The notes under the pieces: model-generated | The model's database searches: none | What the model was told of the DNA's origin: nothing | The model's input: the letters and a program-made list of their open reading frames with translations, nothing else | In this document: positions 20,701 through 43,019 of the stretch, piece by piece | Layout of the letters: every line of letters begins with the position of its first letter | How positions within the stretch are numbered: position 1 is the stretch's first letter | Translations under genes and position numbers: made by a program | Origin: Macrostomum hystrix | Taxonomy: Eukaryota > Animalia > Platyhelminthes | Direction: 5' to 3' | DNA: 64,000 nucleotides | Assembly (NCBI GenBank): GCA_950097015.1 | Contig: CATNEN010000039.1 | Span: 10,354,001 to 10,418,000, forward strand

Positions 20701-23700
20701 TTTCAAGTTTTCAATTCCACTCCTCTCTCCCTCTCACATCTCCCTCCCCCTCTCCCCTATCTCCTCTCTCCTTTCGCTGTCTTCTCTCTACTCTCTACTC
20801 TCCCCTCTCTCCTCTCTCCTTTCGCTGTCTTCTCTCTACTCTCTACTCTCCCCTCTCTCCTCTCTCCTCTCCCATTTCTCCTCTCCCCTCTCCCATCTCA
20901 CCCCTCTCCTCTCTCCACTCCACTCTCCTCTCCCATTTCTCCTCTCCCCCTCCCATCTCACCCCTCTCCTCTCTCCCTCTCACATCTCCCTCCCCCCTCT
21001 CCCCTCTCTCCCCTCTCCTCTCTCATTTCTCCTCTCCCCTCTCCCATCTCACCCATCTCCTCTCTCCTCTCTCCTCTCCCCTCTCCTCTCCCATTTCTCC
21101 TCTCCCCTCTCCCATCTCACCCATCTCCTCTCTCATCTCCCCTCTCCTCTCCCATTTCTCCTTTGCCCTCTCCCATCTCACCTCTCTCCTCTCTCCTCTC
21201 CCCTCTCTCCTCTCTCCTCTCTCCTCTCCCCTCTCCCATCTCACCCCTCTCCTCTCTCCACTCCACTCTCCTCTCCCATTTCTCCTCTCCCCCTCCCATC
21301 TCACCCCTCTCCTCTCTCCCTCTCACATCTCCCTCCCCCCTCTCCCCTCTCTCCCCTCTCCTCTCTCATTTCTCCTCTCCCCTCTCCCATCTCACCCATC
21401 TCCTCTCTCCTCTCTCCTCTCCCCTCTCCTCTCCCATTTCTCCTCTCCCCTCTCCCATCTCACCCATCTCCTCTCTCATCTCCCCTCTCCTCTCCCATTT
21501 CTCCTTTGCCCTCTCCCCTCTCCCTCTCTCCTCTCTCCTCTCCCCTCTCTCCTCTCTCCTCTCTCCTCTCTCCTCTCTCCTCTCTCCTCTCTCCTCTCTA
21601 CTCTCCCCTCTCTCCTCTCTCCTCTCTCCTCTCTCCTCTCCCCTCTCCCCTCTCTCCTCTCCTCTAGTGATTGAGTTGTGATTTTTTCTTTTAACCGTGT
21701 TGTTCGGACAGGTTTTCAGGAGCTCGTTGAGGGCTAATTTCTGATGCACATTGTCGCATAATTCATTTAGCATTCTTTCACACAAGAAACTCGTTTAGCT
21801 TTTATTTTTTCTTCATCCCAGCTGCCCACTGTCCCTTCCTGCGGGTGTCATGTCAGCCAGCCCTGAATATATTTATGCGTTGTCAAGGAGAATGGGCCCC
21901 TCACGTCTCGCTTTTTTGTGAGGCCAGATGGTGAAATGGTATGTTAGCGGCATACTTTGACCTTCTTTCCCCCAGCTTATGGGCGGGGAGGAGAAACATC
22001 AAAGAAGCCGCCGCCGCCGCAGCAGCAGCAGCAGCCGCCAGGTCGTCCCCAAATACCCGTCCCCTCCTCCACTCGACCATCCGACCCCGGGACCTGAGAG
22101 ACAGGCCGGGAGAACAGGGAGTGAGGTGATCTTGGCTGAGGACCGAAGGGTCTTCCTGGGCTCTTCCTGATGACTTCACACGCCTGACAATTCCATCAGG
22201 ACTGTTTCTTCACCACACACATGCACACACTCTCTCTTTACAGCAGGTCTGTAGGCACCAGTGCCACTCATTGCCGCGATCTTTACTCGAACAAAAAATT
22301 GTCCGAAAGTCGTTAAAAAAATCTCGGAGAGGAAGTTATCTTTGCGGACTGTAATTAATTTTCGAAACGTCATAACCAGCAATTTGCAGGGGCTTTATAA
22401 ACACTGCACGGCCGTCAGGTAAACAGGGCGCAGGGCGCAGGGCGCCAGGTTTAGTGGTTCTTGATCTGCAAGTAACTGCTAATGATTCCGCCTCAATCAG
22501 TCATCAATTTTCGTCGATTCGCGTGTAAATAGAAGATGCAGCGGAATAGGGAGGTTGAGGAATAATATTGAAGTTGTCCCTAAACCTACTTGACTGATGA
22601 CATCTGGAATCCAGTGTCTGACTGTGCATCGACCTTCAAGCGGGGGTCCCTTCAAGATGGCCTCCCTTATACTGTTATCAAATTGTTCCAAGATGCGCAG
22701 CCAACAGCACAGCCGCAGCTAATGCGCGGCGCATCTGAAGGCTGCGTACGACTACTGTTCAGTCCATGGACTGGGGGGACGCCACACCCACCCTCAATTA
22801 CCCCAAATATTGTTGCAGTGAAGTTGGGAATCGAACCCCCGACCTTCGAGTCCTTTCGACACCTGAGATCTGTCAGGTGTCGGATAATAAACTCACAGGC
22901 ATGAGATCTGTCAGTGTGGGGTAATGAACTCACAGACATGAGATCTGTCAGGTGTGGGATAATGAACTCACAGACATGAGATCTGTCAGGTGTGGGATAA
23001 TGAACTCACAGACATGAGATCTGTCAGTGTGGGATAATGAACTCACAGACATGAGATCTGTCAGTGTGGGATAATGAACTCACAGACATGAGATCTGCCA
23101 GGTGTGGGATAATGAACTCACGCAAAACAGCAGGTCGCCTTGTCGTAATCCCGCCGTCCACGCGGGCGAGTCGCGGTCCACCTTGGCGATGAACACCAGA
23201 CCGAAGGTCGCTGCAGTCGCTTCTTCAACTGTGACCGGTTCCTGCAAGAATTATTATAAACTGGTGCGTGTCAAGAATGACTTACAAGCAATTATTGTCC
23301 GGTTTGCAGCTAAAGTACTTTCTCTCTGATCAAATCGGGGGAGAATGAAATGTTGACAGAGCTTTCATGCCTGACATGCTGACGACAGCTTCCGCTTCGC
23401 ATGTGACTGGCGAAAAGCACTTTAGCGATTAAAATTTGATACCTTCGATTAGAAAAAGTCGCGTTGTGCGTGAGCTGATCGGTCAGGAGTTTTTTGCAGC
23501 AACGATTTTTTTAGTTGAGCAGAAGTTTAAGCCATTGGACTAATCTCAAAGTGAGACTATAGTCGAGTGACTAGATCAAAGTGAGACTAAATGGTTGAGT
23601 GACTAGATCAAAGTGAGACTAAATGGTTGAGTGACTAGATCAAAGTGAGACTAAATGGTTGAGTGACTAGATCAAAGTGAGACTAAATGGTTGAGTGACT

Positions 23701-25039
23701 AGATCAAAGTGAGACTAAATGGTTGAGTGACTAGATCAAAGTGAGACTAAATGGTTGAGTGACTAGATCAAAGTGAGACTAAATGGTTGAGTGACTAGAT
23801 CAAAGTGAGACTAAATGGTTGAGTGACTAGATCAAAGTGAGACTAAATGGTTGAGTGACTAGATCAAAGTGAGACTATAGTCGAGTGACTAGATCAAAGT
23901 GAGACTAAATGGTTGAGTGACTAGATCAAAGTGAGACTAAATGGTTGAGTGACTAGATCAAAGTGAGACTAGATGGTTGAGTGACTAGATCAAAGTGAGA
24001 CTAAATGGTTGAGTGACTAGATCAAAGTGAGACTAAATGGTTGAGTGACTAGATCAAAGTGAGACTAAATGGTTGAGTGACTAGATCAAAGTGAGACTAA
24101 ATGGTTGAGTGACTAGATCAAAGTGAGACTATAGTCGAGTGACTAGATCAAAGTGAGACTATAGTCGAGTGACTAGATCAAAGTGAGACTATAGTCGAGT
24201 GACTAGATCAAAGTGAGACTATAGTCGAGTGACTAGATCAAAGTGAGACTAAATGGTTGAGTGACTAGATCAAAGTGAGACTATAGTCGAGTGACTAGAT
24301 CAAAGTGAGACTAAAGTCGAGTGACTAGATCAAAGTGAGACTATAGTCGAGTGACTAGATCAAAGTGAGACTATAGTCGAGTGACTAGATCAAAGTGAGA
24401 CTAAATGGTCGAGTGACGAGACCAAAGTGAGACTAAATCGTCGAGTGACTAGATCAAAGTGAGACTAAATGGTCGAGTGACTAGATCAAAGTAAGACTAA
24501 ATGGTTGAGTGACTAGACCAAAGTGAGACTAAATGGTCGAGTGACTAGATCAAAGTGAGACTAAATCGTCGAGTGACTAGATCAAAGTAAGACTAAATGG
24601 TTGAGTGACTAGACCAAAGTGAGACTAAATCGTCGAGTGACTAGATCAAAGTGAGACTATAGTCGAGTGACTAGATCAAAGTAAGACTAAATGGTTGAGT
24701 GACTAGACCAAAGTGAGACTAAATGGTCGAGTGACTAGATCAAAGTGAGACTATAGTCGAGTGACTAGATCAAAGTGAGACTAAATGGTTGAGTGACTAG
24801 ATCAAAGTGAGACTATAGTCGAGTGACTAGATCAAAGTGAGACTAGATGAATGAGACGCGAATAAAATTGATAATCAGCTCACTTGGCCATTTCTGCCAC
24901 CGGCAAGGGTAACGCCCCATTGAACGTTTGCGTCGTTTCGTCTCAGAATGAAAGTCCTCTGCCAGGCAGCACTGAGTCCTGACATTGCTGGTGGCGCCGC
25001 TGGCTCCGCCACGCCAGATTGCACTTTCGGACGAAAATT
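11357..25039 (-). CDS. PDZRN3/PDZRN4/PDZD4 (LNX3-5, Slip1)-type protein with two PDZ domains. Exons: 24884-25039, 23122-23241, 15230-15747, 14815-14959, 13850-13960, 11357-12394; candidate first exon 27571-27624
   Basis: GT-AG junctions keep the frame. PDZ1: [19 protein letters not shown]|..[24 protein letters not shown]|[18 protein letters not shown]2: YE|[24 protein letters not shown]|[24 protein letters not shown]. Family C-terminal motif [28 protein letters not shown]...TTDDD and PDZ-binding tail VSVTFV. Confidence 0.88.
12398..13815. repeat. 17-bp minisatellite (gaagggttgtaggatt-type) filling almost a whole intron of the PDZ gene
   Basis: Tandem periodicity between the acceptor at 12395 and the donor at 13849. 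Confidence 0.96.
15085..15182. repeat. 11-bp minisatellite (gggattcgagt)n, intronic
   Basis: Tandem periodicity. Confidence 0.9.
15795..16312. repeat. Degenerate ~39-bp minisatellite (ggagtgaactgcgtgtcactctatggtcactctagtaca), intronic
   Basis: Repeated gtcactctatggtcactcta units. Confidence 0.88.
17528..17838. repeat. (CTAT)n microsatellite
   Basis: Direct observation. Confidence 0.98.
18345..19082. repeat. Polypyrimidine low-complexity tract built from 7-mers (cctctcg/cctctcc/cctctca)
   Basis: Almost only C and T on the + strand. Confidence 0.93.
20718..21666. repeat. Polypyrimidine low-complexity tract with internal higher-order duplication
   Basis: Almost only C and T on the + strand; blocks of ~100-340 bp recur. 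Confidence 0.93.
22690..22850 (-). mobile_element. Fragment of a second SINE-like dispersed family; related copy at ~33638-33830
   Basis: gatgcgcagccaacagcacagccgcag...catctgaaggctgcgtacg..ctgttcagtccatggactggg..gacgccacacccaccc is shared by both sites; B-box-like ggttcgattccc on the minus strand near 22830. Confidence 0.6.
22862..23121. repeat. 37-38-bp minisatellite whose terminal unit supplies the 5' splice site of PDZ-gene exon 23122-23241
   Basis: Unit catgagatctgtcaggtgtgggataatgaactcacaga, ~7 copies; its reverse complement contains GTGAGT. Confidence 0.9.
23545..24848. repeat. 30/32-bp minisatellite (gagtgactagatcaaagtgagactaaatggtt and gagtgactagatcaaagtgagactatagtc), intronic
   Basis: Tandem periodicity with two interspersed unit variants. 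Confidence 0.96.
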
Positions 25040-28294: not shown

Positions 28295-31200
28295 ATGGCG
28301 ACCGGCCTTGCCCGACTCGGCAGCCGGGTGAAAGCTGCTTTAAAGGTGCCTGGCAGCTGTGGCGGTCACCAGAGGATGTACTCTGCGGACGATAGTAGCG
28401 CGGCAGCGGAGAACGCTGCAGAAACTGCTGAATCGAATGATCACATGGCCGAGACTCGAACCAAGGACCGGCAAGAAAAGATGGACGATCAGGATGGCCG
28501 AAACTTAACCGACGAAAATGAGACAGACTCCACCGTGATGCTGTCGCTGATGCACTTCGCCGATTCCACCACCGCTCACGGGTTCTCACGCCTGGTGGCC
28601 ACCACAGGCCGAGCGGGAAACACCATGTGGACATTGTTCCTGATGGCTGCCTACTCGTTCCTCTGCTACCACACCACCACCCTGGTGCTGAAGTTCATGA
28701 GCCACCCGGTGTCCACCAGCCTGATCGCTGAGCTGCCGTTTGAGTTCCCGGACATTTACCTGTGCAGCGCCAACCCGGTGGGCTACAGCCGCATCACCAA
28801 GTCCATCATGAACACGGCCGCCTATGCCTACCTGTACGATGCGAACCTCACAGGCTACAAGGACAGGCTGCAGCGGGATGTGACGAATAACTCGGCGGCG
28901 CAAGTCAGTCTGGACATTCGGGCGGCCTGGCTCGACTGGCAGTCCAAGATCATGTCCTCCAGGGTCAACCTGTCACTCGGTGAGGGAGAAAGGAATGCGC
29001 TATTTCTTGCTTTTGTGACGTTATTAAGTGCCATGAGTTACATAAAATCAACGGACAAAAATACAGTAAACTTGGAAGTGAATATATTCCTCTGATTTTC
29101 ATTGCAGACCTACTGACCAGCTGCCGCATCTCGCTGCAGGGCCAGGAGTTCACAGGTAACTTCACCTCGGCACTGACCTACAGTCAGAACCTGGAGGAGG
29201 TACGGAAGCCTTGCTTGATGTGGTCGGAAGCCCGGACCCTCATGAGGAACATCTCCGTCGCCATATCCGACCTGGTGCCAAATCTGAACCACGCGAGGTG
29301 CCTGCACAACTCAAGCCTCAACATCAGCCTAATCAAGCCTTTACTAGGCAAGTACTTTTACCTTTCATCTAGAGACACTTTATTTTCGGCCCGATGTCTC
29401 ACTTAAGTCTAGTTTTGGCAAAAAGTGTCTTACAGGCAATTTACAAATATTCCAATCACTCAGGTGTGCCGGCAATGCTTGACAACAGCTTCATAATAGG
29501 TAGTGTGCTGCAGGGCCCGTTCTGCTTTCACAGATCGGCAAATAGCAGCAGCGGCCTGGACATTAACTACTGCGGCGTGCCCTTCTGCAGTGAGTGCCTA
29601 AACATTCATTAGTCTAGCAGAACTGCAATAAGAGTGTACGAGCACCTGAATCAATCAATGCATGCCGCACACTCCAACAGGTAAGCAGGACAACAATCTG
29701 GCCAACTGCTCATCGCGCAACTCTGGCGGCACCTCGGTGAGCACGGCCTACATGGGTTCGGTGCGGACCTCCCGCTCCGGCAAGCCCTGCCTGGCCTGGG
29801 AGTCGCTGGTCAACGGCAGTCTGAGCACCCGATTCCGGAACCTGAACCCGACGCTCCAGTTCCGGGTGTTCCTGCCAGACCCCGAGCCAGTCGCCAACGT
29901 CGGCAGCAGCTGTCGCGGCGCCGCAGTAATGTTCAAGGACAACAACAGCAGCGTTCCTGGCTGGCAGCCGATAAGCAGCCTCATCGTTGACAGCGACGTT
30001 GAGCATGAGTCCTGGTGTATAGTTGAGAAGACTAATTATAACAACATCACTCTAGAGGGCTGTCCAGTTCCAGATTGCTGTAAGTTCTGGCCAAGGACCA
30101 CTAGGAATTACATATATAAGTAGTCCAGTTAAGTTAGGTAGTTAGTTGAGTAGTCCTTGGTTCTGGTTCTGACAGAAAATGGTTCTGGCTAGAAGCTAGG
30201 TAAACTTTCTTACACAATGCAACGAGCGTCATCAGTATTATGCCCAACTTTCAGCCACGTCGCTGAAGTGCATCTCCGGCCTGCTGCACCAGAAGTACGG
30301 CGCGCAGGTGCTGTCGAAGCTTGTCGGACCCAGCCTGGACGTCGGCCTGCTCGACTGCAGCTTCGGCAGTCGCAAGTGCACTTCAGCCGACTTCACGGCG
30401 CTGCACCATCCGTACTACGGCGCCTGCCACCGGTTCAACAGCGGTCCGTTCATCCGCGACCTGACGCCGATGCAGCGCGGACTCCGACCACTCAGCATGA
30501 AGCTGTTCGCCGACGATCACGACTACCTGGGCAACCGACGGTCGGACACGTTCACGGCCGTGCGCGCAGTGATGGGCGGGCCCTACAACACCGGAGAGAG
30601 CAGCGAGCCGGCCGGCTTCAACCTGTTCGTGATGCCTCCGGGCGCCTTCCCGGGCACCGCGCACGCCATTCCCATCTACACCGGAGCCCGGTCCACAGTT
30701 CGCATGAGCTACAGCGTCAGCACCGACAGCACGACGAGGGGCGACTGCAATCCGCTGGAGTCCACCATCGACTACAGCATCCACAGCTGGGACCCGACGG
30801 TGCTGCGTTCCAGGAGTGAGCAGAGCTTCAGCTCTCTGGACTCCTACTTCTTGTGAGTTTCGTCAGTTCTGAATGTCAGATAGGCTAGACAATGTCTTTC
30901 GTTACAGCTTTTAGTAAGTACTTGATGGCATATGTTCTTATGTACGAGACGTTTCTAGACGTGTTGCTATAGAGGCTTTTACAGGGCAATGTTAGTTGTC
31001 CTTGTCACCAAGGTCTTTGACAAGAATCGCTGAAATCCTCGACGATGATGATGTCGGACGGCTTTGCAAGTTAGTTCATTGTGAAGGGCCGATAATTTTG
31101 AACAATATGGTGGACTTTCAAGAGAATCGGCCATTCGGTTTGGGAGCTGTCTTGAAGTAGACATACCCCCGGAGACATTTTGACGTTGCTCTGGTCGGTG

Positions 31201-32578
31201 AAATTAGCTTCTAGTATTGGAAAACGTTCGTTGTGACGTCTTTATAATTGTAACCGTGAATATTAGCATCAGAGTTAAGCTCCAATGACATTCCAAATAA
31301 CATGTCTGAGTTACTAATTTACATCCAGCCAGTTCAACAGCAGCTGGTCCTTCGTGAGCAACCAAGAGTCGTGCGCAAACTTGGCAGTCGTCGATGAGTT
31401 CATAAAGCGTTGCAACTGCCTGCCCTACTCGTTGCCCATCCCGACAAAGTACCGCGACATTCAGTACTGCTTCTATCTGAAGAGCTCAAACATGACCGAC
31501 ATTATGGACCTGCAAAAGCGAGAGGACTGCGCAATGGGCCTGTTTGATAGGATCGAAGCCCTGATGGAGATGTTTTGGACTCGCTGTCAGGCCAACTGCA
31601 AGATACCTAGCTATGCGCTGAGATTGGTTTGTTTAACTTTTACTGTTCTAATCAACTCTGCATTTAAAAAAGCGCAAAAATGACAGAAAGAGAGGCAACT
31701 TTTCATTATAATCTCAAGTGGGTTATTAGTAGCAGAGCGGTTATCGCCTCTTGCACCAATGTCCCTGAGCTCGATTCCGCAGCGAGGCCACAATTAGTTG
31801 GGGCGCAGCCGCGGAGAGAAGGCTTGGGGGCTTGCCGTGCAATTTACACCATTGAGGGCCAACCTCCAAAGTACAATGAAAGTGTACACTGCCTGACGAT
31901 GAGAAATTCAGGGCAGATGTACACACCTGTGTGAGCGCACGCCTGCGTACGGTATCTGTGTGCGTGTGTTCTCAGGAGTCAGCGAAATGGTCAAAATTGC
32001 CTCCTCGCTGGCAGCGTGTCTTGTGTCACAAAATGATTTGCCATTGCCCGCAGCCCTCCTGCAATTATTAATTTTTAATTGATTATTACTTGCAGACAAC
32101 GCAGCCCTGGCCGGACACGTCGCACGCAGCCTACAATGCGACGCTGCAGTCGCTGACCTCTCTGATCGGATTCCCCAAGCAGGTGAGCCCCGACCAAGGC
32201 CTGAGCATGCTCTACTATTCTTACCTGCAGGGAGAGCAGCTGATGCAGCCCAGCTCGGTGGAGCGGTTCGGCCAGTCGCTGGCAATGCGGGAGGCGGCCC
32301 GCAGCAACCTGGCGTGGATCCGGGTCGAGGCCGAGTACCCGACCGGGTCGGGCAGCTCGCAGACTGACGGCTATCCGATCGAGAACCTCATGGCCGAGCT
32401 TGGCGGCATCCTGGGTCTCTACTGCGGCGTCTCCGTGCTGACCATCTGCGAGCTGATGGACCTGGCGGGCCGCCTGCTGCTCCGCGCGGCGATGAGGTCC
32501 CTGCGTAGCCGTGGCAGAGTCGGCGGCGTCGACGCTACCTCTAGCGATCTGCAGAAGGTGGCTTCGTCAGCTCTGTAG
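28295..32578 (+). CDS. DEG/ENaC (amiloride-sensitive Na+ channel family) subunit 1 with two extracellular kringle-like domains, ~942 aa. Exons: 28295-28979, 29108-29347, 29464-29589, 29681-30079, 30255-30852, 31329-31626, 32096-32578
   Basis: Pre-TM1 FADSTTAHG motif, TM1, FEFPDIYLCSANP, LLDCSFGSRKC, HPYYGACHRFN, Cys-rich thumb, TM2 LMAELGGILGLYCGVSVLTICE with a GxS filter. Exon lengths sum to 2829 nt in one open frame; intron 2 uses a GC donor. Confidence 0.92.
31719..32075 (+). mobile_element. tRNA-derived SINE (family 1), near full length, in intron 6 of channel gene 1
   Basis: A-box-like tagcagagcgg, B-box-like gagctcgattcc, body shared with 38078-38387, 57322-57890, 62672-62862 and 43020-43110, and an (att)n-like tail. 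Confidence 0.8.
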
Positions 32579-33167
32579 GCCACTTGGCTTTTTTCAACGC
32601 CACTTAAAAGCTTATGTAGCACTCCACCGCTTTGAGAAAATGAAACCTGTCAATTTATTGCTTATCCTGAAGCTTCTCTGAACTTGGTCAATATGTCTCT
32701 TGGCCCACAGCGACCTGACCTGGAGCTGGTTCAGTTTAGGTAGGTCCTTAACAAGTACTTAAGAAAAGCTATGTTTCGTGAAGTTTCTGTTTGCTTACCA
32801 TTAATCCTTGTGTAATTCAGTTTTGACTTTACGCGCGTCACACATCACTATTAGATCGTTAGGACACTTTTAAGACTTTTTAAAGCAAAATCATCTACTG
32901 CGTTTTTCCACCGTGAGTCTTAAGATTTCGTCTCTATGAGCTTACAGCTGAGCAATTTTCTTTCTGAATTTGTCATTCTAATTCCGATCCATTTTTGAGC
33001 GGCGTGTGTACAGACTGTGTACAGTTGCTTTGTCCGTGGACTTCGGGTGGCGAAGCATACGCTAAATTATTTATGTATTAGCTGATGCTGATTCTTATTC
33101 GTCAGCTAAGTGAACTCAAGCAGAAAAACATTAAGTGTGTTGCTAAAGGATATCGACTCTTTCCCAT

Positions 33168-33236
33168 TGTGTGAGAATTCGAACCGACGACCTCTCGCTC
33201 AAAGTCTCAAGCTCTAACCAATGGTCTACAAGCTCC
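33168..33236 (-). pseudogene. Degenerate tRNA-like sequence (tRNA pseudogene or SINE head)
   Basis: Minus strand reads gagcttgtagaccattggttagagc...gaggtcgtcggttcgaattctcac, with A/B-box spacing but poor stems. Confidence 0.45.
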
Positions 33237-34320
33237 TTAACTCATTCAAAGCATCTGGACATGAGTTGGTATGTGAATGTAAGATCCGTTGATCGACATT
33301 TTTATAATGTTTTGTTTACAAAAAATTTTCTAGAAGAAAAGAATTTGAATATTAATAAATAAAACGCCAAATAAGGCATTATTTTACGTTTTTAAGCATC
33401 AGTTAATGTGAAAATTTTATATGCCAATTTTTTTAACGTTAATTGAAGTCGACGCAGTCATATGAAAACATGCTCGTTTATGAGCACAGCAAAAAGGCTA
33501 TTTTTAATTCATTAGTGTGATGATAACATGAGTATGCCCTACTGCTTGTTAACCTAAGTAAACATTTCAATCGCGAATTCTCTGTCCTATAACAATGATT
33601 ATTTGATAATACGCTCGTACCTGCCCCTAGTGGGCCAGATGTGCAGCCGACAGCACAGCCGCAGATATTGCGCGACGCATCTGAAGGCTGCGTACGGCTG
33701 TTCAGTCCATGGACTGGGTGGACGCCACACCCACCCATTTAACAACTGGGTGAACTGAAGCAATGCAGAGTTACGTGTCTTGCTAAAGTATACAATTTGT
33801 CCCAGTGGAGTCAGGAATGGAACCAACGACGCTCTAATTATGAGGCTACAACCAATTTGGTCTACTATGCCGTCCGTCCGGCTGTCTGTACTGTCTGTCC
33901 GAGCTACTAGTAACTAAAGCTATACTTGCAGTTGCCATGAGTTGACAAATCAGATTAGCTCTACAATCAGCTAATTGACTCAACTGACGGGCGTGAGAAT
34001 CCTTTCAAATGAAGTGCTCTGATTGTCTCACAATTTGAAGCCGATCCGAAATCCGCCCGTCACGGAGCACATCGAGAATTAAGAGGCTCGCCCAGCCAAA
34101 CAGAGGGCCCGCTGCCCTTCCACTCTTCAGACAGGGAGTCCCACCAGCCACTAGAATCTAATTCTGGTTGCCATTAGCGACTAATCAAACAATCCAATAG
34201 CAGGGGAACAGACGCCAGCGAGTTTGAGGGTTTAAATCCAAATTTACGCAAATCTTATGCCATTAAAGCTAAGACAGGCACTGGTGCTCCGCACATACTG
34301 CACGCCTTGCTGAGACAGCT

Positions 34321-37300
34321 ATGATGGAAACAAAGCTATCGGACAAAGATGAGGAGAGCAAAGCTACCCAAGACAGTGACGATACTCACAACGACATGTC
34401 CGTGTCCCTGTCGCTGATAAACTTCGCCGATTCCACCACCGCTCACGGGTTCTCGCACCTGGCCGGGTCTGGACGCACTGGCAGCGGCCTGTGGATACTA
34501 TTCCTGATGGCTGCCTACTCGTTCCTCTGCTACCACACCACCACCCTGGTGCTGAAGTTCAAGAGCCACCCGGTGTCCACCAGCCTGATCGCTGAGCTGC
34601 CGTTTGAGTACCCGGACATTTACCTGTGCAGCGCCAACCCGGTGGGCTACAGCCGCATCACCAAGTCCATCAATAACACGGCCGCCTATGCCTACCTGTA
34701 CGATGCGAACCTCACAGGCTACAAGGACAGGCTGCAGCGGGATGTGACGAATAACTCGGCGGCGCAAGTCAGTCTGGACATTCGGGCGGCCTGGCTCGAC
34801 TGGCAGTCCAAGATCATGTCCTCCAGGGTCAACCTGTCACTCGGTGAGGGAGATACTTCGTTCGTATTGTACCATGACCTTTTTGCCCGGCGGGCAGAAA
34901 GTCTTGCCCGTTAATGGCCATAGATGAATTAATGCCCGGTAATTTTCTTGCGGGCAGTTAATAGCCATTAACCGCCACCATAGACACCATAGACACCAAG
35001 TTTATTGCATTATAAGAAATGCAATCTGTTTGCACCATAGACATTCCACCAGGGGTTCAATGTCGTCCATTACAACCCCGCGGTATTTAATGGCGGGATT
35101 CCCAGCGGTTCTGTTTGCACCATAGACATTCCGCCAGGGGTTCAATGTCGTCCATTACAACCCCGCGGTATTTAATGGCGGGATTCCCAGCTGTTCTGTT
35201 TGCACCATAGACATTCCACCGGGGGTTTAATGTCGTCCATTACAACCCCGCGGTATTCAATGGCGGGATTCCCCGCGTTGCTCAATGAAAATACACACTT
35301 AACGTTTGAAATACAAGAATCCAAAGGGAATTCCCCATAGACATACTCGTAGTTTAATGATGTTCATTAAAGCACTTGCTCAGCGTTGTTCAATGGTATA
35401 TTGACTTTCGCGTGCTAACTGAGACTTTTTTCATGCAATCTGAGACTGAATTGCAAAAATGCGTTATAGTCTATGGCCAACCCTCGTTTCTGCTTATCAT
35501 TTTAGCACGCCTAGCAGCAAAGTGAGATTTCTTTCAACCTAAGTGAGATAGAATTCAGCGGTTAAACAAAATTATAAGACTCAGTGGAAATTGAGTAACC
35601 ATATTCGACGGCACGGACTAGGCGCAATCTGTCCTTGTTGCTTGTTAAACGCACCAAAGTTTCTAATGTTTCTCACTTAGCTTGCTAGGTGGGCCTAAAA
35701 TGCCAGGCTCAAGCGAGGGTTGGCCACAGACTAGCAAGGCAGCATTTTTTGCTATTCAGTCTCAGATTGCTTGAAAAAAGTCTCGCTTAGCATGCAAAAA
35801 ACAGTACTGGAATATTTTGTCTATGGTCGTATCGTACTCACAACACGTAATCTAAATTGAAATAATTGCGAGATAATTCAAATCAGTTCGCGCTGACATT
35901 GAATACGAAGTAGAATAGCATATGGTACCTGAGCGATTCGGTTGCTGGAATGTGAGCAGAGGAGAGCACAGAGGAGAGACCAGAGCAGGTCTGGTGGTCG
36001 GTTTGCCAATGTTTGCTCAGCTTGACTGCTGCTGGCAGACCTGAGCGACAGAAACAAATTTTCAAACCAGGCTTTGGGAATGTTCCGGTTTACACGGCAA
36101 AACATTCTCACACAGGTTGGAAATGTGTTGAAAAGAAACTCAAGTTTGATTTATCAGTTTGAATTATACCCACTTTAAATATCGTTGAACTCAGTTGCAT
36201 ACTCAGCCACAAACCATTGCAGATCTACTGAGCAGCTGCCGCATCTCTCTGCAGGGCCAGGAGTTCACAGGTAACTTCACCTCGGCACTGACCTACAGCC
36301 GGGAACTGGAAGCGGTGCGGGAGCCCTGTCTGACGTGGTCGGCAGCCCGCACCCTCCTGAGGAACATCTCCGTGGCCATATCCGACCTGGTGCCAAACCT
36401 GAACGACGCGAGGTGCTTGTACAACTCAAGCATGAACATCAGCCTTATAAAGGCTTACCTGGGTAAATTTAGGGATCGGGGTTGGGGTTCCCGACCTAAC
36501 GTACTGTTAAGTTTACTACAAGTAATCGCTAGACATTGCGTAAGGATGCTCACGCAGTACTCCTAAGTCAGTACTAAAACTTACAATAGTAACGTGTTCA
36601 AATTGGGGCGCTTCTAACAACGGCGTACGGATGCTCTCGTAGGTTGAAATGTAAGTAAGATAGTACAATACGGACCAGGCATTCAGAAAGGAAAGACGCG
36701 AAAGGAGCGCTTACCTGTTGGGACGCAAGGAGTAGACGCAGGTAGCTGCAATGTTCATGTGGGTTTCAATGGTTCATACTCGTACAGTAAGAAATTGAGT
36801 CTTCGCAGTAAGAGACCGACTTTAGCGCCTCAGGGCAGACAGGGAAGCGATGCACAAAAAACAAAGGCCAAGACACCAGGAGCGAAGGGAGGGTAGTAGC
36901 ACGCGCTGGCCGGGTGGACGGGTATAATCACGCAGAACTGATTGGCAGGAGCGGCAAAGCCACGCTGGGCAGGGGGGTAGAGCTGAGAGACAACGCCCGT
37001 GCCCAACCAATCAGGTGGCGGCGCGGGGGAACGCAGAGCGGGGGGGACGGGAGGAAAGGGCGAGCAACCTCAACCGGCCTGAAACGGGCCTGGGGGGCAG
37101 CAATTTTTCAAGCATTTTATGCATTCAACTTTGTCACTAACAAAATCCAGGAGCATACAGCAACGCCAACAGCTTCAACAGCTTCACAATAAGCAATGTG
37201 CTGCAGGGCCCGTTCTGCTTTCACAGATCGGCAAACAGCAGCAGCGGCCTGGACATAAACTACTGCGGCGTGCCCTTCTGCAGTGAGTCTTGAAGGGACT

Positions 37301-40087
37301 AAATTAGGAACAATAATAGAGAGCAAACAAATTAAAAAAAGACATCTCTCATCTCATCTCTTAGGTAAAGAGAACAATGGCCTGGCCAACTGCTCATCGC
37401 TCAGCTCTAGCACCTCAGTGAGCACGGCCTACATGGGCTCCATGCGGACCTCCCGCTCCGGCAAGCCCTGCCTGGCCTGGGAGTCGCTGGTCAACGGCCG
37501 TCTGAGCACCCGATTCCGGAACCTGAACCCGACGCTCCAGTTCCGGGTGTTCCTGCCAGACCCCGAGCCAGTCGCCAACGTCGGCAGCAGCTGTCGCGGC
37601 GCCGCAGTAATGTTCAAGGACAACAACAGCAGCGCTCCTGGCTGGCAGCCGATAAGCAGCCTCATCGTCGACTCCCAGCTGGACCAGGGCCCCTGGTGCT
37701 TTGTGGAGAAGCAGGGCTCGCTGAACCTCACAATGGAGAGCTGCACCGTTCCTGATTGCTGTGAGTCAATACTCAGGGCATTGAAGGGTTTCCATAGAAT
37801 TCGAAAGACTTGGTGAAAGAAACGAAAAATGTATCAAAGGTGTAGTATCAACAGCAACGAGGCTTGAGCCTTGAGCGGACGAACAAAGACCGCACCGGGG
37901 CATCAGGAGAGCAAGCTTCAGCCAAAAGCCAGTCGCCGGTAGGGTGCCTGCAGCGTGAGCAGAAGCATCTCCTTGACCGGCTGTGGGATGTAGAACTCTG
38001 CGCGGATGATGATGTGTCGATGCGCTCTCCAAGGAGCTTCTCACAGCTTCTCTCGAAGCGCAACGCCACGATGTCTTTGGGCAATGTCACATCATTTGGT
38101 GACAATTCTGCCCATTTCGCTGACTCCTGAGAACACACGCACACAGATACCGTACGCAGGCGTGCGCTCACACAGGTGTGTACATCTGCCCTGAATTTCT
38201 CATCGTCAGGCAGTGTACACTCTCACTGTGTCTTGAAGGTTGGCCCTCAATGGCGTAAATTTCATGGCAAGCCCCCAAGCCTTTACTCCGCGGCTGCGCC
38301 CCAAATAATTGTGGCCTCGCTGCGGAATCGAGCTCAGGGACCTTGGTGCAAGAGGCAAACGCGATAACTACTCTGCCACTGATCCCCAATGCCGGAGCTC
38401 AGAGTGCAGCTGGCCAGTATATTGCCAATTATATCTGGAGCTATCGAGAACAGCTCTTCTTTTCAGCCACGTCACTGAAGTGCATCTCCGGCCTGCTGCA
38501 CCAGAAGTACGGTGCGCAGGTGCTGTCGAAGCTTGTCGGACCCAGCCTGGACGTCGGCCTGCTCGACTGCAGCTTCGGCAGTCGCAAGTGCACTTCAGCC
38601 GACTTCACGGCGCTGCACCATCCGTACTACGGCGCCTGCCACCGGTTCAACAGCGGTCCGTTCATCCGCGACCTGACGCCGATGCAGCGCGGACTCCGAC
38701 CGCTCAGCATGAAGCTGTTCGCCGACGATCACGACTACCTGGGCAACCGACGGTCGGACACGTTCGCGGCCGTGCGCGCAGTGATGGGCGGGCCCTACAA
38801 CACCGGAGAGAGCAGCGAGCCGGCCGGCTTCAACCTGTTCGTGATGCCTCCGGGCGCCTTCCCGGGCACCGCGCACGTCATTCCCATCTACACCGGAGCC
38901 CGGTCCACAGTTCGCATGAGCTACTGTGTCAGCACCGACAGCACGACGAGGGGCGACTGCAATCCGCTGGAGTCCACCATCGACTACAGCATCCACAGCT
39001 GGGACCCGACGGTGCTGCGTCCCAGGAGTGAGCAGAGCTTCAGCTCTCTGGACTCCTACTTCTTGTGAGTGGCTCATTTATATAGGATTGTTTAGAATTT
39101 TATCGTATAGATGTCTCATGATATTCTCTTTAAGTTGCTGATAAGCAACGAGTTTTCTGAGCAAGCATAGATTATTGGCACTCAAATTGGATGGACAGGT
39201 CGAAGTACTAATCGTTTCGCTCCGCAGTCAATTCAACAGCTCAAGCTTGGTCTTCGCTAGCAACCAAGAGTCCTGCGCCAACCTGGCTGTCGTTGAAAAG
39301 TTCATCAGCGAATGCAAATGCCTGCCCTATTCGCTTCCGATCCCAACAAAGTACAGCAGCATTCCCTACTGCTTCTCACTCAAAAGTGCCGACCAGGCCG
39401 GAATCAGCGAGTTGCTGAATCAGGAGGCCTGCGCGATGAGACTGTTCGAGCAGATGGATGTGCTCACTGAGTCGTTCTGGAGCACCTGCAAGGCCAACTG
39501 CAGGCAGCCTAAATACGTATCGCAGCTTGTGAGTTGAGGCCTTAAAAAAGAGGCATCAGGTGGTTTAAACAAATGCGATATTCGCTAATTTTCTTGGTCG
39601 CACTGGCCCACAGACAACGCAGCCCTGGCCGGACACGTCGCACGCAGCCTACAATGCGACGCTGCAGTCGCTGACCTCTCTGATCGGATTCCCCAAGCAG
39701 GTGAGCCCCGACCAGGGCCTGAGCATGCTATACTATTCTTACCTGCAGGGAGAGCAGCTAATGCAGCCCAGCTTGGTGGAGCGGTTTGGCCAGTCGCTGG
39801 CAATGCGGGAGGCGGCTCGCAGCAACCTGGCGTGGATCCGGGTCGAGGCCGAGTACCCGACCGGGTCGGGCAGCTCGCAGACTGACGGCTATCCGATCGA
39901 GAACCTCATGGCCGAGCTTGGCGGCATCCTGGGTCTCTACTGCGGCGTCTCCGTGCTGACCATCTGCGAGCTGATGGACCTGGCGGGCCGCCTGCTGCTC
40001 CGCGCGGCGATGAGGTCCCTGCGTAGCCGTGGCAGAGTCGGCGGCGTCGACGCTTCTCCTAGCAAGAAGGCTTCGTCTGTTCCGTAG
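34321..40087 (+). CDS. DEG/ENaC subunit 2 with two kringle-like domains, tandem paralog, ~887 aa. Exons: 34321-34843, 36223-36462, 37151-37282, 37365-37760, 38467-39064, 39228-39528, 39614-40087
   Basis: Same motifs and intron positions/phases as subunit 1; exon lengths sum to 2664 nt in one open frame; all introns GT-AG; AATAAA near 40269. Confidence 0.92.
35026..35280. repeat. 85-bp tandem repeat, three copies, intronic
   Basis: ctgtttgcaccatagacattcc starts at 35026, 35111 and 35196. Confidence 0.93.
35410..35796. mobile_element. Fold-back/MITE-like element with ~120-bp imperfect inverted arms, in intron 1 of channel gene 2
   Basis: gagacttttttcatgcaatctgagactgaattgcaaaaatgc...tggccaaccctcg pairs with cgagggttggcca...gcattttttgctattcagtctcagattgcttgaaaaaagtctc. 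Confidence 0.75.
38078..38387 (-). mobile_element. tRNA-derived SINE (family 1), antisense in intron 4 of channel gene 2
   Basis: Reverse complement of the 31719-32075 element; head gggatcagtggcagagtagtt...gagctcgattccgc. Confidence 0.82.
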
Positions 40088-40332
40088 GCAGTGCTTTTTT
40101 AGTGAGGCCTTGTTCTTGATGCCATCGGATTTTTAAGCGTACTTCTTTGAGGAAAACTTTGAGCAATGTATTGATATGATACCCTAAATGATGGATTATT
40201 AAAATGCCAGTAAAACTGTACCATGTTGAAATGCTAATACACATATCTCATTCTGACCCTGTGATTTAAATAAAAAAAAACCACGCTCATTACTTCATCA
40301 AACGTTAAAGCTGTTCTAAAACTACGGAATAA

Positions 40333-42633
40333 CGTGTGTGTGTGCTTGTGTCTCAGCTGTGTTTATACCTAATTGAATACCTGTGTGTGTGTGCTTGTGT
40401 CTCAGCTGTGTTTATACCTAATTGAATACCTGTGTGTGTGTGCTTGTGTCTCAGCTGTGTTTATACTAATTGAATACCTGTGTGTGTGTGCTTGTGTCTC
40501 AGCTGTGTTTATACCTAATTGAATACCTGTGTGTGTGTGCTTGGGTCTCAGCTGTGTTTATACCTAATTGAATACCTGTGTGTGTGTGCTTGTGTCTCAG
40601 CTGTGTTTATACCTAATTGAATACCTGTGTGTGTGCTTGTGTCTAAGCTGTGTTTTTACCTAATTGAATACCTGTGTGTGTGTGCTTGTGTCTAAGCTGT
40701 GTTTATACCTAATTGAATACCTGTGTGTGTGTGCTTGTGTCTCAGCTGTGTTTATACCTAATTGAATACCTGTGTGTGTGTGCTTGTGTCTCAGCTGTGT
40801 TTATACCTAATTGAATACCTGTGTGTGTGTGCTTGTGTCTCAGCTGTGTTTATACCTAATTGAATACCTGTGTGTGTGTGCTTGTGTCTCAGCTGTGTTT
40901 ATACCTAATTGAATACCTGTGTGTGTGTGCTTGTGTCTCAGCTGTGTTTATACCTAATTGAATACCTGTGTGTGTGTGTGCTTGTGTCTCAGCTGTGTTT
41001 ATACCTAATTGAATACCTGTGTGTGTGTGCTTGGGTCTCAGCTGTGTTTATACCTAATTGAATACCTGTGTGTGTGTGCTTGTGTCTCAGCTGTGTTTAT
41101 ACCTAATTGAATACCTGTGTGTGTGCTTGTGTCTAAGCTGTGTTTATACCTAATTGAATACCTGTGTGTGTGTGTGCTTGTGTCTAAGCTGTGTTTATAC
41201 CTAATTGAATACCTGTGTGTGTGTGCTTGTGTCTCAGCTGTGTTTATACCTAATTGAATACCTGTGTGTGTGTGCTTGTGTCTCAGCTGTGTTTATACCT
41301 AATTGAATACCTGTGTGTGTGTGCTTGTGTCTCAGCTGTGTTTATACCTAATTGAATACCTGTGTGTGTGTGCTTGTGTCTCAGCTGTGTTTATACCTAA
41401 TTGAATACCTGTGTGTGTGCTTGTGTCTCAGCTGTGTTTATACTAATTGAATACCTGTGTGTGTGTGCTTGTGTCTCAGCTGTGTTTATACCTAATTGAA
41501 TACCTGTGTGTGTGTGCTTGTGTCTCAGCTGTGTTTATACCTAATTGAATACCTGTGTGTGTGTGCTTGTGTCTCAGCTGTGTTTATACCTAATTGAATA
41601 CCTGTGTGTGTGCTTGTGTCTCAGCTGTGTTTATACCTAATTGAATACCTGTGTGTGTGTGCTTGTGTCTCAGCTGTGTTTATACCTAATTGAATACCTG
41701 TGTGTGTGTGCTTGTGTCTCAGCTGTGTTTATACCTAATTGAATACCTGTGTGTGTGCTTGTGTCTCAGCTGTGTTTATACCTAATTGAATACCTGTGTG
41801 TGTGTGCTTGTGTCTCAGCTGTGTTTATACCTAATTGAATACCTGTGTGTGTGTGCTTGTGTCTCAGCTGTGTTTATACCTAATTGAATACCTGTGTGTG
41901 TGTGCTTGGGTCTCAGCTGTGTTTATACCTAATTGAATACCTGTGTGTGTGTGCTTGTGTCTCAGCTGTGTTTATACCTAATTGAATACCTGTGTGTGTG
42001 TGCTTGTGTCTCAGCTGTGTTTATACCTAATTGAATACCTGTGTGTGTGTCCTTGTGTCTCAGCTGTGTTTATACCTAATTGAATACCTGTGTGTGTGTG
42101 TGCTTGTGTCTCAGCTGTGTTTATACCTAATTGAATACCTGTGTGTGTGTGCTTGTGTCTCAGCTGTGTTTATACCTAATTGAATACCTGTGTGTGTGTG
42201 CTTGTGTCTCAGCTGTGTTTATACCTAATTGAATACCTGTGTGTGTGCTTGTGTCTAAGCTGTGTTTATACCTAATTGAATACCTGTGTGTGTGTGTGCT
42301 TGTGTCTAAGCTGTGTTTATACCTAATTGAATACCTGTGTGTGTGTGCTTGTGTCTCAGCTGTGTTTATACCTAATTGAATACCTGTGTGTGTGTGCTTG
42401 TGTCTCAGCTGTGTTTATACCTAATTGAATACCTGTGTGTGTGTGTGCTTGTGTCTCAGCTGTGTTTATACCTAATTGAATACCTGTGTGTGTGTGCTTG
42501 GGTCTCAGCTGTGTTTATACCTAATTGAATACCTGTGCGTGTGTGCTTGTGTCTCAGCTGTGTTTATACCTGATTGAATACCTGTGTGTGTGTGCTTGTG
42601 TCTCAGCTGTGTTTATACCTAATTGAATATCTG
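40333..42633. repeat. ~49-bp satellite (gtgtgtgtgtgcttgtgtctcagctgtgtttatacctaattgaatacct)n with a variable internal (gt)n run
   Basis: Tandem periodicity, about 47 copies. Confidence 0.97.
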
Positions 42634-43019
42634 TTAAACCATTTTTTATTAACAATGATATCTTATTCTCTTGCGAATAAAAAAGAATGCTGATGAAGAA
42701 CCCTGTAAATCATAGCCATTCTTGGTCAATACCCGCACTAAAGTGCAAATTATTTGCAGCAGAGCTTGAGTCTTGAGTACTATTGTTTTACAATCATTTA
42801 TAATTGAGGATGAATTGTAGAGTGGTTTAGCCTTGCGCATAAATTTGACCTGCTGTGAAGAAGGCCCAGGTTCGGGTTATTGACACAATTTTCCTCCTTT
42901 TAAACTCACAGGTGAGCAATTTCCCATGAAAGCAAATGCAGCTTCCGTTACTCTCGAAAGTCCTGCTTTAGCTTTAAGAACTGGTTTTGACACATAGCTG
43001 AAATACTTTTGATTTCGAC

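What the first reader, a model, noticed from the sequence alone, without database searches (positions are those of the whole stretch)
28295..40087. DEG/ENaC ion channels with two kringle domains inserted in the extracellular finger region
Seen in sequence: between FEFPDIYLC and LLDCSFGSRKC, both channel genes carry two modules with the complete six-Cys kringle pattern. K1 is CRISLQGQEFTG...KPCLMWS...ARCLHN...GPFCFH...NYCGVPFC. K2 is CSSRN..AYMGSVRTSRSGKPCLAWES...SSCRG...(ES/GP)WC(I/F)V...C.VPDC. Established: kringles follow C...Y.G..s.T.SG..C..W...C R....PWC....C..P.C and occur in plasminogen-family proteases, HGF, ROR/MuSK and Kremen. The finger is the variable gating region of DEG/ENaCs (ENaC protease-sensitive GRIP segment, FaNaC peptide site, degenerin extra Cys-rich domains). 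I know of no characterised kringle-bearing DEG/ENaC. Inference: a trimer would display six kringles, so this could be a channel gated by a protein ligand, a protease or matrix tethering. The HG gate motif and GVS filter are intact, so it looks functional.
Basis: partly seen in the sequence, partly recalled or inferred. Interest (0 to 1): 0.92.

Follow-up and report, generated by a model that had tools for sequence, protein, structure and literature searches.

The report
Sodium channels carrying two built-in kringle modules
This flatworm has two neighbouring, intact sodium-channel genes of the DEG/ENaC family whose outer "finger" region carries two kringle-type protein-binding modules, a design I found in no paper; it would suit docking to an outside protein, but expression and function are untested.

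Summary
Window 28295-32578 (gene A) and 34321-40087 (gene B) are two tandem seven-exon DEG/ENaC genes with open frames. Both keep the HG motif, two membrane segments and a GVS filter.

Three phase-1/phase-1 exons, about 255 residues, lie between Pfam ASC positions 107 and 147, which is the finger region. They encode two six-cysteine modules.
- K2 (one exon) is a true but divergent kringle. Pfam scores it below threshold. Profile-profile comparison gives 98.4% (E 6.7e-15). An AlphaFold model has pLDDT 76, and its best structural matches are all kringles (Z 5-6.3). It carries a roughly 25-residue insertion between Cys3 and Cys4.
- K1 (two exons) is more divergent. Its halves match kringle columns 3-53 and 55-80, in the right order.

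A third paralogue on another contig and Macrostomum lignano database proteins share the design. UniProt names some of these "Kringle domain-containing protein".

The scan found this before on other DNA: a sister group of at least 13 genes in the same genome carries a WSC exon inside K1. A, B and C are the WSC-less branch.

No paper I could search describes a kringle-bearing DEG/ENaC.

The parts
28295..28979 (+). Gene A exon 1: N-terminus, HG motif (28574-28582), TM1, beta1-beta2 (PDIYLC 28748-28765) and the first finger helices. Ends in phase 1 at G|GTGAGG.
   Evidence: Pfam ASC 1-107, 52 bits. Splice site. Aligns to ENaC beta 26-110 and to ASIC1 chains up to about residue 110-118, depending on each entry's numbering. 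Motifs and hydropathy.
29108..29347 (+). Gene A exon 2: K1 N-half (Cys1-Cys3), 240 nt, phase 1-1. Donor AG|GCAAGT; an alternative GT donor would end the exon at 29351.
   Evidence: hhalign to kringle columns 3-53, E 5e-4, 0 of 100 shuffles as high.
29464..29589 (+). Gene A exon 3: K1 C-half (Cys4-Cys6), 126 nt, phase 1-1. An alternative acceptor would start the exon at 29504.
   Evidence: The upstream part VPAMLDNSFIIGS matches M. lignano VPKLDSNYTIGK. hhalign to kringle columns 55-80: 94.7%, E 6.3e-8.
29681..30079 (+). Gene A exon 4: K2, a complete kringle with an insertion of about 25 residues. 399 nt, phase 1-1.
   Evidence: Pfam Kringle E 6e-5. hhalign 98.4%. Alignment A3.
30255..30852 (+). 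Gene A exon 5: end of the finger and the beta-ball/palm (LLDCSFGSRKC at 30347).
   Evidence: Pfam ASC 147-280. Aligns to ENaC alpha 274-369 and ASIC2 162-216.
31329..31626 (+). Gene A exon 6: Cys-rich segment (7 Cys), probably the thumb.
   Evidence: Pfam ASC 295-374. No match to solved chains by sequence.
32096..32578 (+). Gene A exon 7: palm, TM2 with the GVS filter (32426-32434), C-terminus and stop.
   Evidence: Pfam ASC 381-454..
34321..34843 (+). Gene B exon 1 (HG at 34441-34449).
   Evidence: Pfam ASC 1-105, 51.6 bits..
36223..36462 (+). Gene B exon 2: K1 N-half, 240 nt, phase 1-1, donor CTGG|GTAAAT.
37151..37282 (+). Gene B exon 3: K1 C-half, 132 nt, phase 1-1, acceptor tccag|GA.
37365..37760 (+). 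Gene B exon 4: K2, 396 nt, phase 1-1. This is the module that was modelled.
   Evidence: Pfam Kringle E 2.3e-7. AlphaFold pLDDT 75.9. Foldseek and VIA matches are all kringles.
38467..39064 (+). Gene B exon 5.
   Evidence: Pfam ASC 147-280. 98% identical to gene A.
39228..39528 (+). Gene B exon 6, only 59% identical to gene A.
39614..40087 (+). Gene B exon 7 with TM2, GVS (39944-39952) and the stop.

Best explanation
Genes A and B are intact subunit genes of trimeric DEG/ENaC cation channels. Three symmetric phase-1 exons have placed about 255 residues into the finger, the peripheral domain that carries ligand and protease sensitivity in ASIC, FaNaC and ENaC. These residues form two disulfide-rich, heavily N-glycosylated modules derived from kringles.

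Shown:
- the channel core with its gate and filter motifs;
- the kringle homology and modelled fold of K2;
- the in-order kringle homology of K1;
- conservation of the same exon and phase plan in a 35-45% identical paralogue;
- a single clade of kringle-bearing channels in this genome;
- dN/dS below 1 in the K exons.

Inferred: each subunit projects a K1-K2 arm from the top of the ectodomain, so a trimer would carry six kringles. The arm most likely docks an extracellular macromolecule, such as a matrix, mucus, adhesive or secreted protein. Because it is spliced between the finger helices that pack on the thumb, binding or pull on the arm would be passed to the gate. That would make it either a ligand-modulated channel or a tethered mechanosensor. 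The arm is unlikely to use the classical lysine-binding pocket, because the acidic centre is missing.
For: Channel core:
- Pfam ASC matches four exons of each gene, and the frames are open across all seven exons (2829 and 2664 nt).
- HG, GVS and two hydrophobic segments are present.
- The insertion point maps between about residue 110 and 162 of ASIC chains, and between 110 and 245 of ENaC beta, which is the finger/GRIP region.

K2 as a kringle:
- hhalign 98.4%, E 6.7e-15.
- Aligned with 16 kringle exons of the same genome, four of the aligned cysteines (Cys2-Cys5), a Trp and an Arg are invariant and Cys6 nearly so.
- The AlphaFold model has pLDDT 75.9.
- The listed Foldseek hits (ranks 1-50) are all kringles, and VIA gives Z 5-6.3 at rmsd 2.6-3.3 A over 70-80 residues.

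K1 as kringle-derived:
- The halves match kringle columns 3-53 and 55-80, both above all 100 shuffles.

Conservation:
- Paralogue C (G000:C3, locus L002) has the same seven exons and the same phases.
- M. lignano models join E1-E4 (P0002), E4-E5 (P0001) and E2-E7 (P0003).
- On an exon-5 tree the kringle-bearing channels form one clade, support 97/96.
- dN/dS between A and B is 0.26, 0 and 0.52 for the K exons.
- The K exons carry 10 N-glycosylation sequons in 252 residues, against 3 in 457 for exons 5-7.
- A and B differ most in the K arm and in exon 6, the probable thumb. The palm and pore exons are 94-98% identical.
Against: - Inclusion of exons 2-4 in mRNA therefore rests on splice logic, conservation and gene models from another species.
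- All K exons are phase 1-1, so transcripts that skip them would stay in frame.
- Pfam does not call either module above its threshold.
- The K2 model used an alignment that included canonical kringles, so it is not fully independent.
- No ligand, tether or current is known.
- The lysine-binding acidic centre is absent.
Confidence: 0.5

Rival explanations
1. The arm has no gating role. It would be a structural, folding, trafficking or shielding appendage, for example a glycan-rich cap or an assembly determinant that selects subunit partners.
For: - The arm has high sequon density.
- The lysine-binding centre is missing.
- Many DEG/ENaC finger insertions have no known ligand (established knowledge).
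- Subfamily-specific divergence between A and B would also fit partner selection.
Against: - The six-Cys framework and long-loop motifs are conserved over 35% identical paralogues and across species.
- The position in the finger, next to the probable thumb exon that co-diverges, is where gating modulators act in every studied family member.
Confidence: 0.2
2. The arm is an autoinhibitory or protease-controlled insert, like the ENaC GRIP domain. Cleavage or removal of the K arm would activate the channel.
For: - The insertion is in the region equivalent to the ENaC finger/GRIP.
- A furin/kexin-type proprotein convertase gene lies about 20 kb upstream in the window.
- Kringles occur in protease zymogens (established knowledge).
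Against: - By eye, I saw no dibasic or RXXR site flanking the modules that is conserved between this species and M. lignano.
- The neighbouring convertase may be coincidence.
- Kringles in proteases are binding modules, not cleavage substrates.
Confidence: 0.1
3. The K exons are optional cassette exons or are not used. The main product would then be an ordinary channel with exon 1 spliced to exon 5, and the full kringle form would be rare, tissue-specific or an annotation artefact.
For: - Every K exon is phase 1-1, so any combination can be skipped in frame.
- The M. lignano models disagree around exons 2-3. P0003 lacks exon 3, P0017 lacks part of K1, and P0016 retains intron sequence.
- I obtained no RNA data.
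Against: - The frames are open, the splice sites are canonical and all 12 cysteines are kept in three paralogues.
- dN/dS is below 1 in the K exons.
- At least 16 genes of the clade keep kringle exons, which is hard to explain if they were unused.
Confidence: 0.12
4. The modules are not kringles. The cysteine pattern would be a chance or convergent resemblance.
For: - Pfam is below threshold for K2 and gives no hit for the K1 pieces.
- Foldseek E-values are only 0.05-0.7.
- Three of the 12 phmmer hits were spurious repeat proteins.
Against: - hhalign gives 98.4% for K2 and 94.7% for the K1 C-half, and the shuffle controls never reached these scores.
- Six of the phmmer hits are multi-kringle proteins.
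- All listed structural matches are kringles and cover 70-80 of about 80 residues.
Confidence: 0.03

Closest known systems
Kringle/WSC/kringle DEG/ENaC genes of the same genome (earlier scan notes s1-310526, s1-306108, s1-402470, s1-316719; loci on C39, C25, C8, C30)
   Same: - The channel core is the same and the insertion point is the same.
- K1 is split at the same place, and K2 follows it.
- They form one clade with A, B and C on an exon-5 tree (97/96).
   Different: - They carry a WSC exon between the two halves of K1, and their K2 is split over two exons.
- A, B and C have no WSC exon; intron 2 of gene A is only about 116-152 nt.
- In A, B and C, K2 is a single exon.
- A, B and C are the sister branch (support 85/85), so WSC gain or WSC loss is equally parsimonious.
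Macrostomum lignano database proteins A0A1I8GPM0 (P0001), A0A1I8G9S9 (P0002), A0A1I8FXR6 (P0003)
   Same: - They are likely orthologues or close paralogues (40-67% identity to K2 of gene B) with the same K1, K2 and ASC order.
- UniProt names two of them 'Kringle domain-containing protein' and one 'Acid-sensing ion channel 1-like'.
   Different: - They are fragmentary and mutually inconsistent gene models. None spans the whole protein correctly.
- They carry automatic names only; I found no description in any paper.
ENaC finger/GRIP domain (human ENaC structures such as 6WTH and 9BLR)
   Same: - A large subfamily-specific insertion in the finger, between beta2 and the conserved Cys-rich strand.
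- It regulates gating from the periphery (established knowledge).
   Different: - GRIP is a beta-rich domain with protease-released inhibitory tracts. It is not a kringle, and no homology was seen here.
FaNaC peptide-gated channels (8ON7, 7YVB) and ASIC
   Same: - Same channel family; exon 1 matches these chains.
- In both, the finger region is the agonist-sensing part (established knowledge).
   Different: - They have short helical fingers without added domains, and their ligands are small (a peptide, protons).
- Three M. lignano DEG/ENaCs tested in oocytes did not respond to FMRFamide-type peptides (PMC9234716). It is not known whether those were kringle-bearing genes.
C. elegans degenerins (MEC-4/MEC-10) with extra Cys-rich extracellular domains and extracellular tethers
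   Same: - Extra cysteine-rich modules in the ectodomain.
- A proposed link to extracellular matrix for mechanical gating (established knowledge, from memory).
   Different: - Degenerin extra domains are not kringles.
- The tether proteins there are separate gene products, whereas here a binding module is built into the subunit.
Membrane proteins with kringles: ROR1/2, MuSK, Kremen (kringle-WSC-CUB), flatworm Tmed-krg1
   Same: - A kringle is used as an extracellular binding module on a membrane protein.
- ROR1 and ROR2 kringles are among the structural matches.
- Tmed-krg1 is proposed to hold a lysine-rich adhesive protein in flatworm anchor cells (PMC9229212).
   Different: - None of them is an ion channel.
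- Their kringles lack the roughly 25-residue insertion between Cys3 and Cys4.

Membership tests
DEG/ENaC (Pfam ASC, PF00858) | Profile match above the curated cut-off | tested here: met
   Exon by exon, the cut-off (23.6 bits) is passed by exon 1 (52 and 51.6 bits), exon 5 (29.8 and 26.6) and exon 7 (36.6 and 35.7). Exon 6 scores 23.2 and 19.5, just under. Together they cover profile 1-107 and 147-454.
DEG/ENaC (Pfam ASC, PF00858) | Two membrane segments flanking a large Cys-rich ectodomain, an HG motif before TM1 and a G/S-x-S filter in TM2 | tested here: met
   The hydropathy peaks are LFLMAAYSFLCYHTTTLVL (exon 1) and LGGILGLYCGVSVLTICEL (exon 7). AHG and GVS are present in both genes.
DEG/ENaC (Pfam ASC, PF00858) | Trimeric, amiloride-sensitive cation current | not testable with these tools
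   Needs expression and electrophysiology.
Kringle (PF00051) | Pfam profile match above the gathering score (34.3 bits) | tested here: not met
   K2 scores 23.7 bits (A) and 31.5 bits (B). The match is broken by the loop insertion. The K1 pieces give no hit. The canonical kringle exons of the same genome score 40-87 bits.
Kringle (PF00051) | Six-cysteine framework in the same order as the kringle consensus (C..Y.G..T.SG..C..W...CR....PWC....C..P.C) | tested here: met
   K2: hhalign 98.4%, E 6.7e-15 over kringle columns 4-78. In alignment A3, four cysteines (Cys2-Cys5), W and R are invariant and Cys6 nearly so. K1: N-half to columns 3-53 (E 5e-4) and C-half to columns 55-80 (E 6.3e-8), both above 100 shuffles.
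Kringle (PF00051) | Kringle fold | tested here: met
   K2 only. The AlphaFold model has pLDDT 75.9. VIA gives Z 5-6.3, rmsd 2.6-3.3 A over 70-80 of about 80 residues, to tPA, plasminogen, prothrombin, ROR and HGF kringles. The alignment used held canonical kringles. K1 was not modelled, because a joined two-exon model was not built.
Kringle (PF00051) | 1-6, 2-4, 3-5 disulfide bonding | not testable with these tools
   Needs a structure or disulfide mapping.
Lysine-binding kringles (plasminogen K1/K4 type) | Acidic Asp-x-Asp centre after Cys3 plus an aromatic pocket | tested here: not met
   After Cys3-Arg, K2 reads GAAV followed by the insertion. After Cys3, K1 reads LHNS or LYNS. The Trp of PWC is kept only in K2.
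Kremen-type kringle-WSC-CUB ectodomain | WSC and CUB domains following the kringle | tested here: not met
   No WSC exon was found in A, B or C by tblastn with a WSC exon of the sister family. Pfam finds no WSC or CUB on any exon piece.

The most novel reading that the evidence does not exclude
The built-in K1-K2 arm is the channel's receptor. These would then be DEG/ENaC channels opened, or held under tension, by a specific extracellular protein such as a matrix, mucus or adhesive component. A and B would recognise different partners through their divergent arm and thumb. That would be the first DEG/ENaC with a dedicated, modular protein-binding domain spliced into its gating machinery. It would also be a natural example of exon shuffling creating a new ligand class for an ion channel.
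Probability: 0.25. Interest if true: 0.85.

Novelty: new variant of a known kind. Interest (0 to 1): 0.65.

Why it matters
DEG/ENaC channels are gated by very different stimuli: protons, peptides, proteases, force and bile acids. All of these act through the same peripheral finger-thumb region. How new sensitivities arise there is an open question.

This is a clear case of classical module shuffling. Symmetric phase-1 exons encoding kringles, and in sister genes a WSC domain nested inside a kringle loop, were inserted into that region. The clade then expanded to at least 16 genes.

If the arm binds a partner, it offers two things. One is a tractable model for macromolecule- or tether-gated DEG/ENaCs; M. 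lignano, which has related genes, is a laboratory flatworm (from memory). The other is a natural template for attaching binding domains to these channels.

It also shows that kringles tolerate large insertions, even a whole domain, in the Cys3-Cys4 loop.

Tried and rejected
- Joined spliced model. There is therefore no full-length Pfam scan, no full-length or trimer model, and no K1 fold. All searches were run exon by exon, by reference.
- Single-sequence AlphaFold of K2 gave pLDDT 37 and was useless. It was replaced by an alignment-based run.
- ESM Atlas gave no usable hit for K1. For P0003 it gave only plain ASC clusters at scores below 0.9.
- The search for homologous proteins with P0003 returned only the query itself. 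With the K region of P0002 it returned only M. lignano proteins. No kringle-bearing DEG/ENaC from outside Macrostomum was found, but the tool's length and word limits make this weak evidence of absence.
- phmmer hits P0004, P0009 and P0011 turned out to be PKD-like and FG-GAP repeat proteins. They are spurious.
- My first splice model for intron 2 of gene A (GT donor after 29351, exon 3 from 29504) was demoted. The GC-donor model with a longer exon 3 also fits gene B and the M. lignano sequences.
- Exon 6 could not be mapped to solved structures by sequence or by profile. Calling it the thumb is inference.
- Pfam PF25866, listed in the precomputed domains of P0003, is not in the local library, so its identity is unknown.
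- A nested independent gene made of exons 2-4 was rejected. These exons have no start, stop or signal peptide. Their phases match exons 1 and 5. The arrangement is conserved across all 14 loci where a K1 exon was found (A, B, C and 11 WSC-branch genes).

Full report
**What is there**

The region holds two tandem genes on the + strand. Scanned exon by exon and by reference, Pfam ASC (PF00858) matches four pieces of each gene:
- exon 1: profile 1-107, 52 and 51.6 bits;
- exon 5: profile 147-280;
- exon 6: profile 295-374;
- exon 7: profile 381-454.

Three further exons lie in the gap between profile positions 107 and 147.

**Exon model**

Splice sites were read from the DNA.
- Gene A: 28295-28979, 29108-29347, 29464-29589, 29681-30079, 30255-30852, 31329-31626, 32096-32578. 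The sum is 2829 nt, in frame.
- Gene B: 34321-34843, 36223-36462, 37151-37282, 37365-37760, 38467-39064, 39228-39528, 39614-40087. The sum is 2664 nt, in frame.

Exon 1 ends in phase 1, exons 2, 3 and 4 are each phase 1-1, and exon 5 starts in phase 1.

For intron 2 of gene A, two in-frame solutions exist. I prefer the GC donor (AG|GCAAGT after 29347) with the acceptor before 29464, for two reasons:
- the added residues VPAMLDNSFIIGS match M. lignano VPKLDSNYTIGK;
- the same phase-1 solution works for gene B and for paralogue C.

I built no joined protein model. Lengths and phases were computed from coordinates only.

**The channel core**

Both genes keep the HG motif, a TM1 and a TM2 hydropathy peak, and a GVS filter. 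Against solved structures, exon 1 aligns to ENaC beta 26-110, to ASIC1 chains up to about residue 110-118 (depending on each entry's numbering), and to FaNaC. Exon 5 aligns to ENaC alpha 274-369, ENaC beta 245-300 and ASIC2 162-216. The extra exons therefore sit where ASIC has its finger helices and ENaC its finger/GRIP domain. That domain map is established knowledge, recalled from memory.

**K2 is a kringle**

- Pfam Kringle hits the exon at E 6e-5 (A) and 2.3e-7 (B). The scores of 23.7 and 31.5 bits stay under the 34.3-bit cut-off because the match is broken in two.
- A phmmer search of 1.84 billion representatives with K2 of gene B found only 12 proteins. Three are M. lignano proteins that combine this module with ASC. 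Six are multi-kringle proteins. Three are spurious repeat proteins.
- A profile of five K2 modules against 40 canonical kringles gives hhalign probability 98.4%, E 6.7e-15, over kringle columns 4-78. No column-shuffled control (100 runs) exceeded a score of 17.6, against 78.3 observed.
- Aligned with 16 canonical kringle exons of the same genome, four of the aligned cysteines (Cys2-Cys5), the Trp after Cys2 and the Arg after Cys3 are invariant, and Cys6 nearly so. K2 has about 9 extra residues in the Cys2-Cys3 loop and about 25 between Cys3 and the PWC motif.
- With that alignment, AlphaFold gives mean pLDDT 75.9, with the insertion modelled as strands at 80-87. Without an alignment it gave 37.
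- The listed Foldseek hits (ranks 1-50) are all kringles, at E 0.05-0.7. VIA-align gives Z 5-6.3 and rmsd 2.6-3.3 A over 70-80 of about 80 target residues.
- The model is not fully independent, because canonical kringles were in the alignment.

**K1 is kringle-derived**

Its two exons were tested separately. The C-half matches kringle columns 55-80 (94.7%, E 6.3e-8). The N-half matches columns 3-53 (31.6%, E 5e-4). The two matches are in the right order, and both are above all 100 shuffles. The intron splits K1 between Cys3 and Cys4, which is exactly where K2 has its insertion. I did not model K1.

Neither module keeps the acidic centre of lysine-binding kringles.

**Conservation and family**

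A third gene, C (G000:C3, locus L002, minus strand), is 35-45% identical. It has the same seven exons, the same phases and all twelve cysteines.

A profile of K1 N-halves finds 14 loci in the genome. Of the 11 others:
- ten carry a WSC exon between the two K1 halves, and their K2 is split over two exons;
- one (L012) showed no WSC at E 1e-3.

Two more partial members appeared in an exon-5 search.

On an exon-5 tree, the kringle-bearing channels form one clade (97/96) apart from three ordinary DEG/ENaCs. A, B and C (85/85) are sister to the WSC-bearing group (89/89). This was a single short exon with a midpoint root, so WSC gain and loss are equally possible.

The earlier scan notes on kringle/WSC/kringle channels in this genome describe that sister group. 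So the scan has seen this architecture before on other DNA.

**Between A and B**

- dN/dS is 0.26, 0 and 0.52 for the three K exons.
- Divergence is mosaic. Exons 5, 7 and 1 have dS 0.03-0.09, the K exons 0.12-0.29, and exon 6 has dS 1.4 with 59% identity.
- This points to gene conversion over the core.
- Real differences are concentrated in the arm and in the Cys-rich exon 6, which is probably the thumb.

**Public databases and papers**

The M. lignano proteins are fragmentary UniProt models named 'Kringle domain-containing protein' or 'Acid-sensing ion channel 1-like'. They join E1-E4, E4-E5 and E2-E7, but disagree around exons 2-3.

Full-text searches combining kringle with ENaC, degenerin, acid-sensing ion channel or Macrostomum found no description of such a channel.
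- One paper tested three M. lignano DEG/ENaCs in oocytes without a peptide response (PMC9234716).
- Another proposes that a membrane multi-kringle protein holds a lysine-rich adhesive in a flatworm (PMC9229212).

**What could not be done**

There is therefore no transcript evidence for this species, and the exon joins are inferred.

**Interpretation**

The architecture is secure. The mechanism is inference. I favour a glycosylated six-kringle crown on the trimer that docks an extracellular macromolecule and passes binding or tension to the finger-thumb gate. The rivals are a non-gating structural role, protease control, or optional cassette exons.

It is a new variant of a known kind, undescribed in the literature I could search but present as unexamined automatic annotation.

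Noticed in passing
window 6563-8500 (-): A single-exon 645-residue furin/kexin-type proprotein convertase (S8 pro-domain, Peptidase_S8, P-domain), about 20 kb upstream of the channel pair. Any link to the channels is speculation.
   Followed up: partly
window 3776-4768 (+): A 330-residue IAP-like ORF with a BIR domain and a C-terminal RING finger.
   Followed up: partly
window exons of A versus B (28295-32578 versus 34321-40087): Divergence between the tandem copies is mosaic. Exons 5, 7 and 1 are nearly identical (dS 0.03-0.09). Exon 6 is very different (dS 1.4, 59% identity). This suggests gene conversion, or an exon brought in from another paralogue.
   Followed up: partly
window 31931-32071 (+) and 37848-38171 (-): The same short element, with ORFs that start with an identical 20 residues, sits in intron 6 of gene A and, inverted, in intron 4 of gene B. 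It looks like a dispersed repeat.
   Followed up: no
G000:C38:9498977-9509508: A cluster of at least 12 canonical kringle exons, probably one multi-kringle gene. Compare the flatworm anchor-cell protein Tmed-krg1 (PMC9229212).
   Followed up: no
whole genome G000: WSC domain exons are greatly expanded: 436 first-look candidates and long tandem arrays on C1, C7 and C39.
   Followed up: no
window 1-2906, 12399-13814, 23546-24849, 40327-42634 and others: The window is rich in long tandem arrays, with periods of 16-49 nt and up to about 137 copies. These produce long spurious ORFs.
   Followed up: no
L012 (G000:C8:3893000-3902999): One member of the WSC-bearing branch showed K1 N and C halves but no detectable WSC exon at E 1e-3. 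This could be a second WSC-less gene or a divergent WSC.
   Followed up: no
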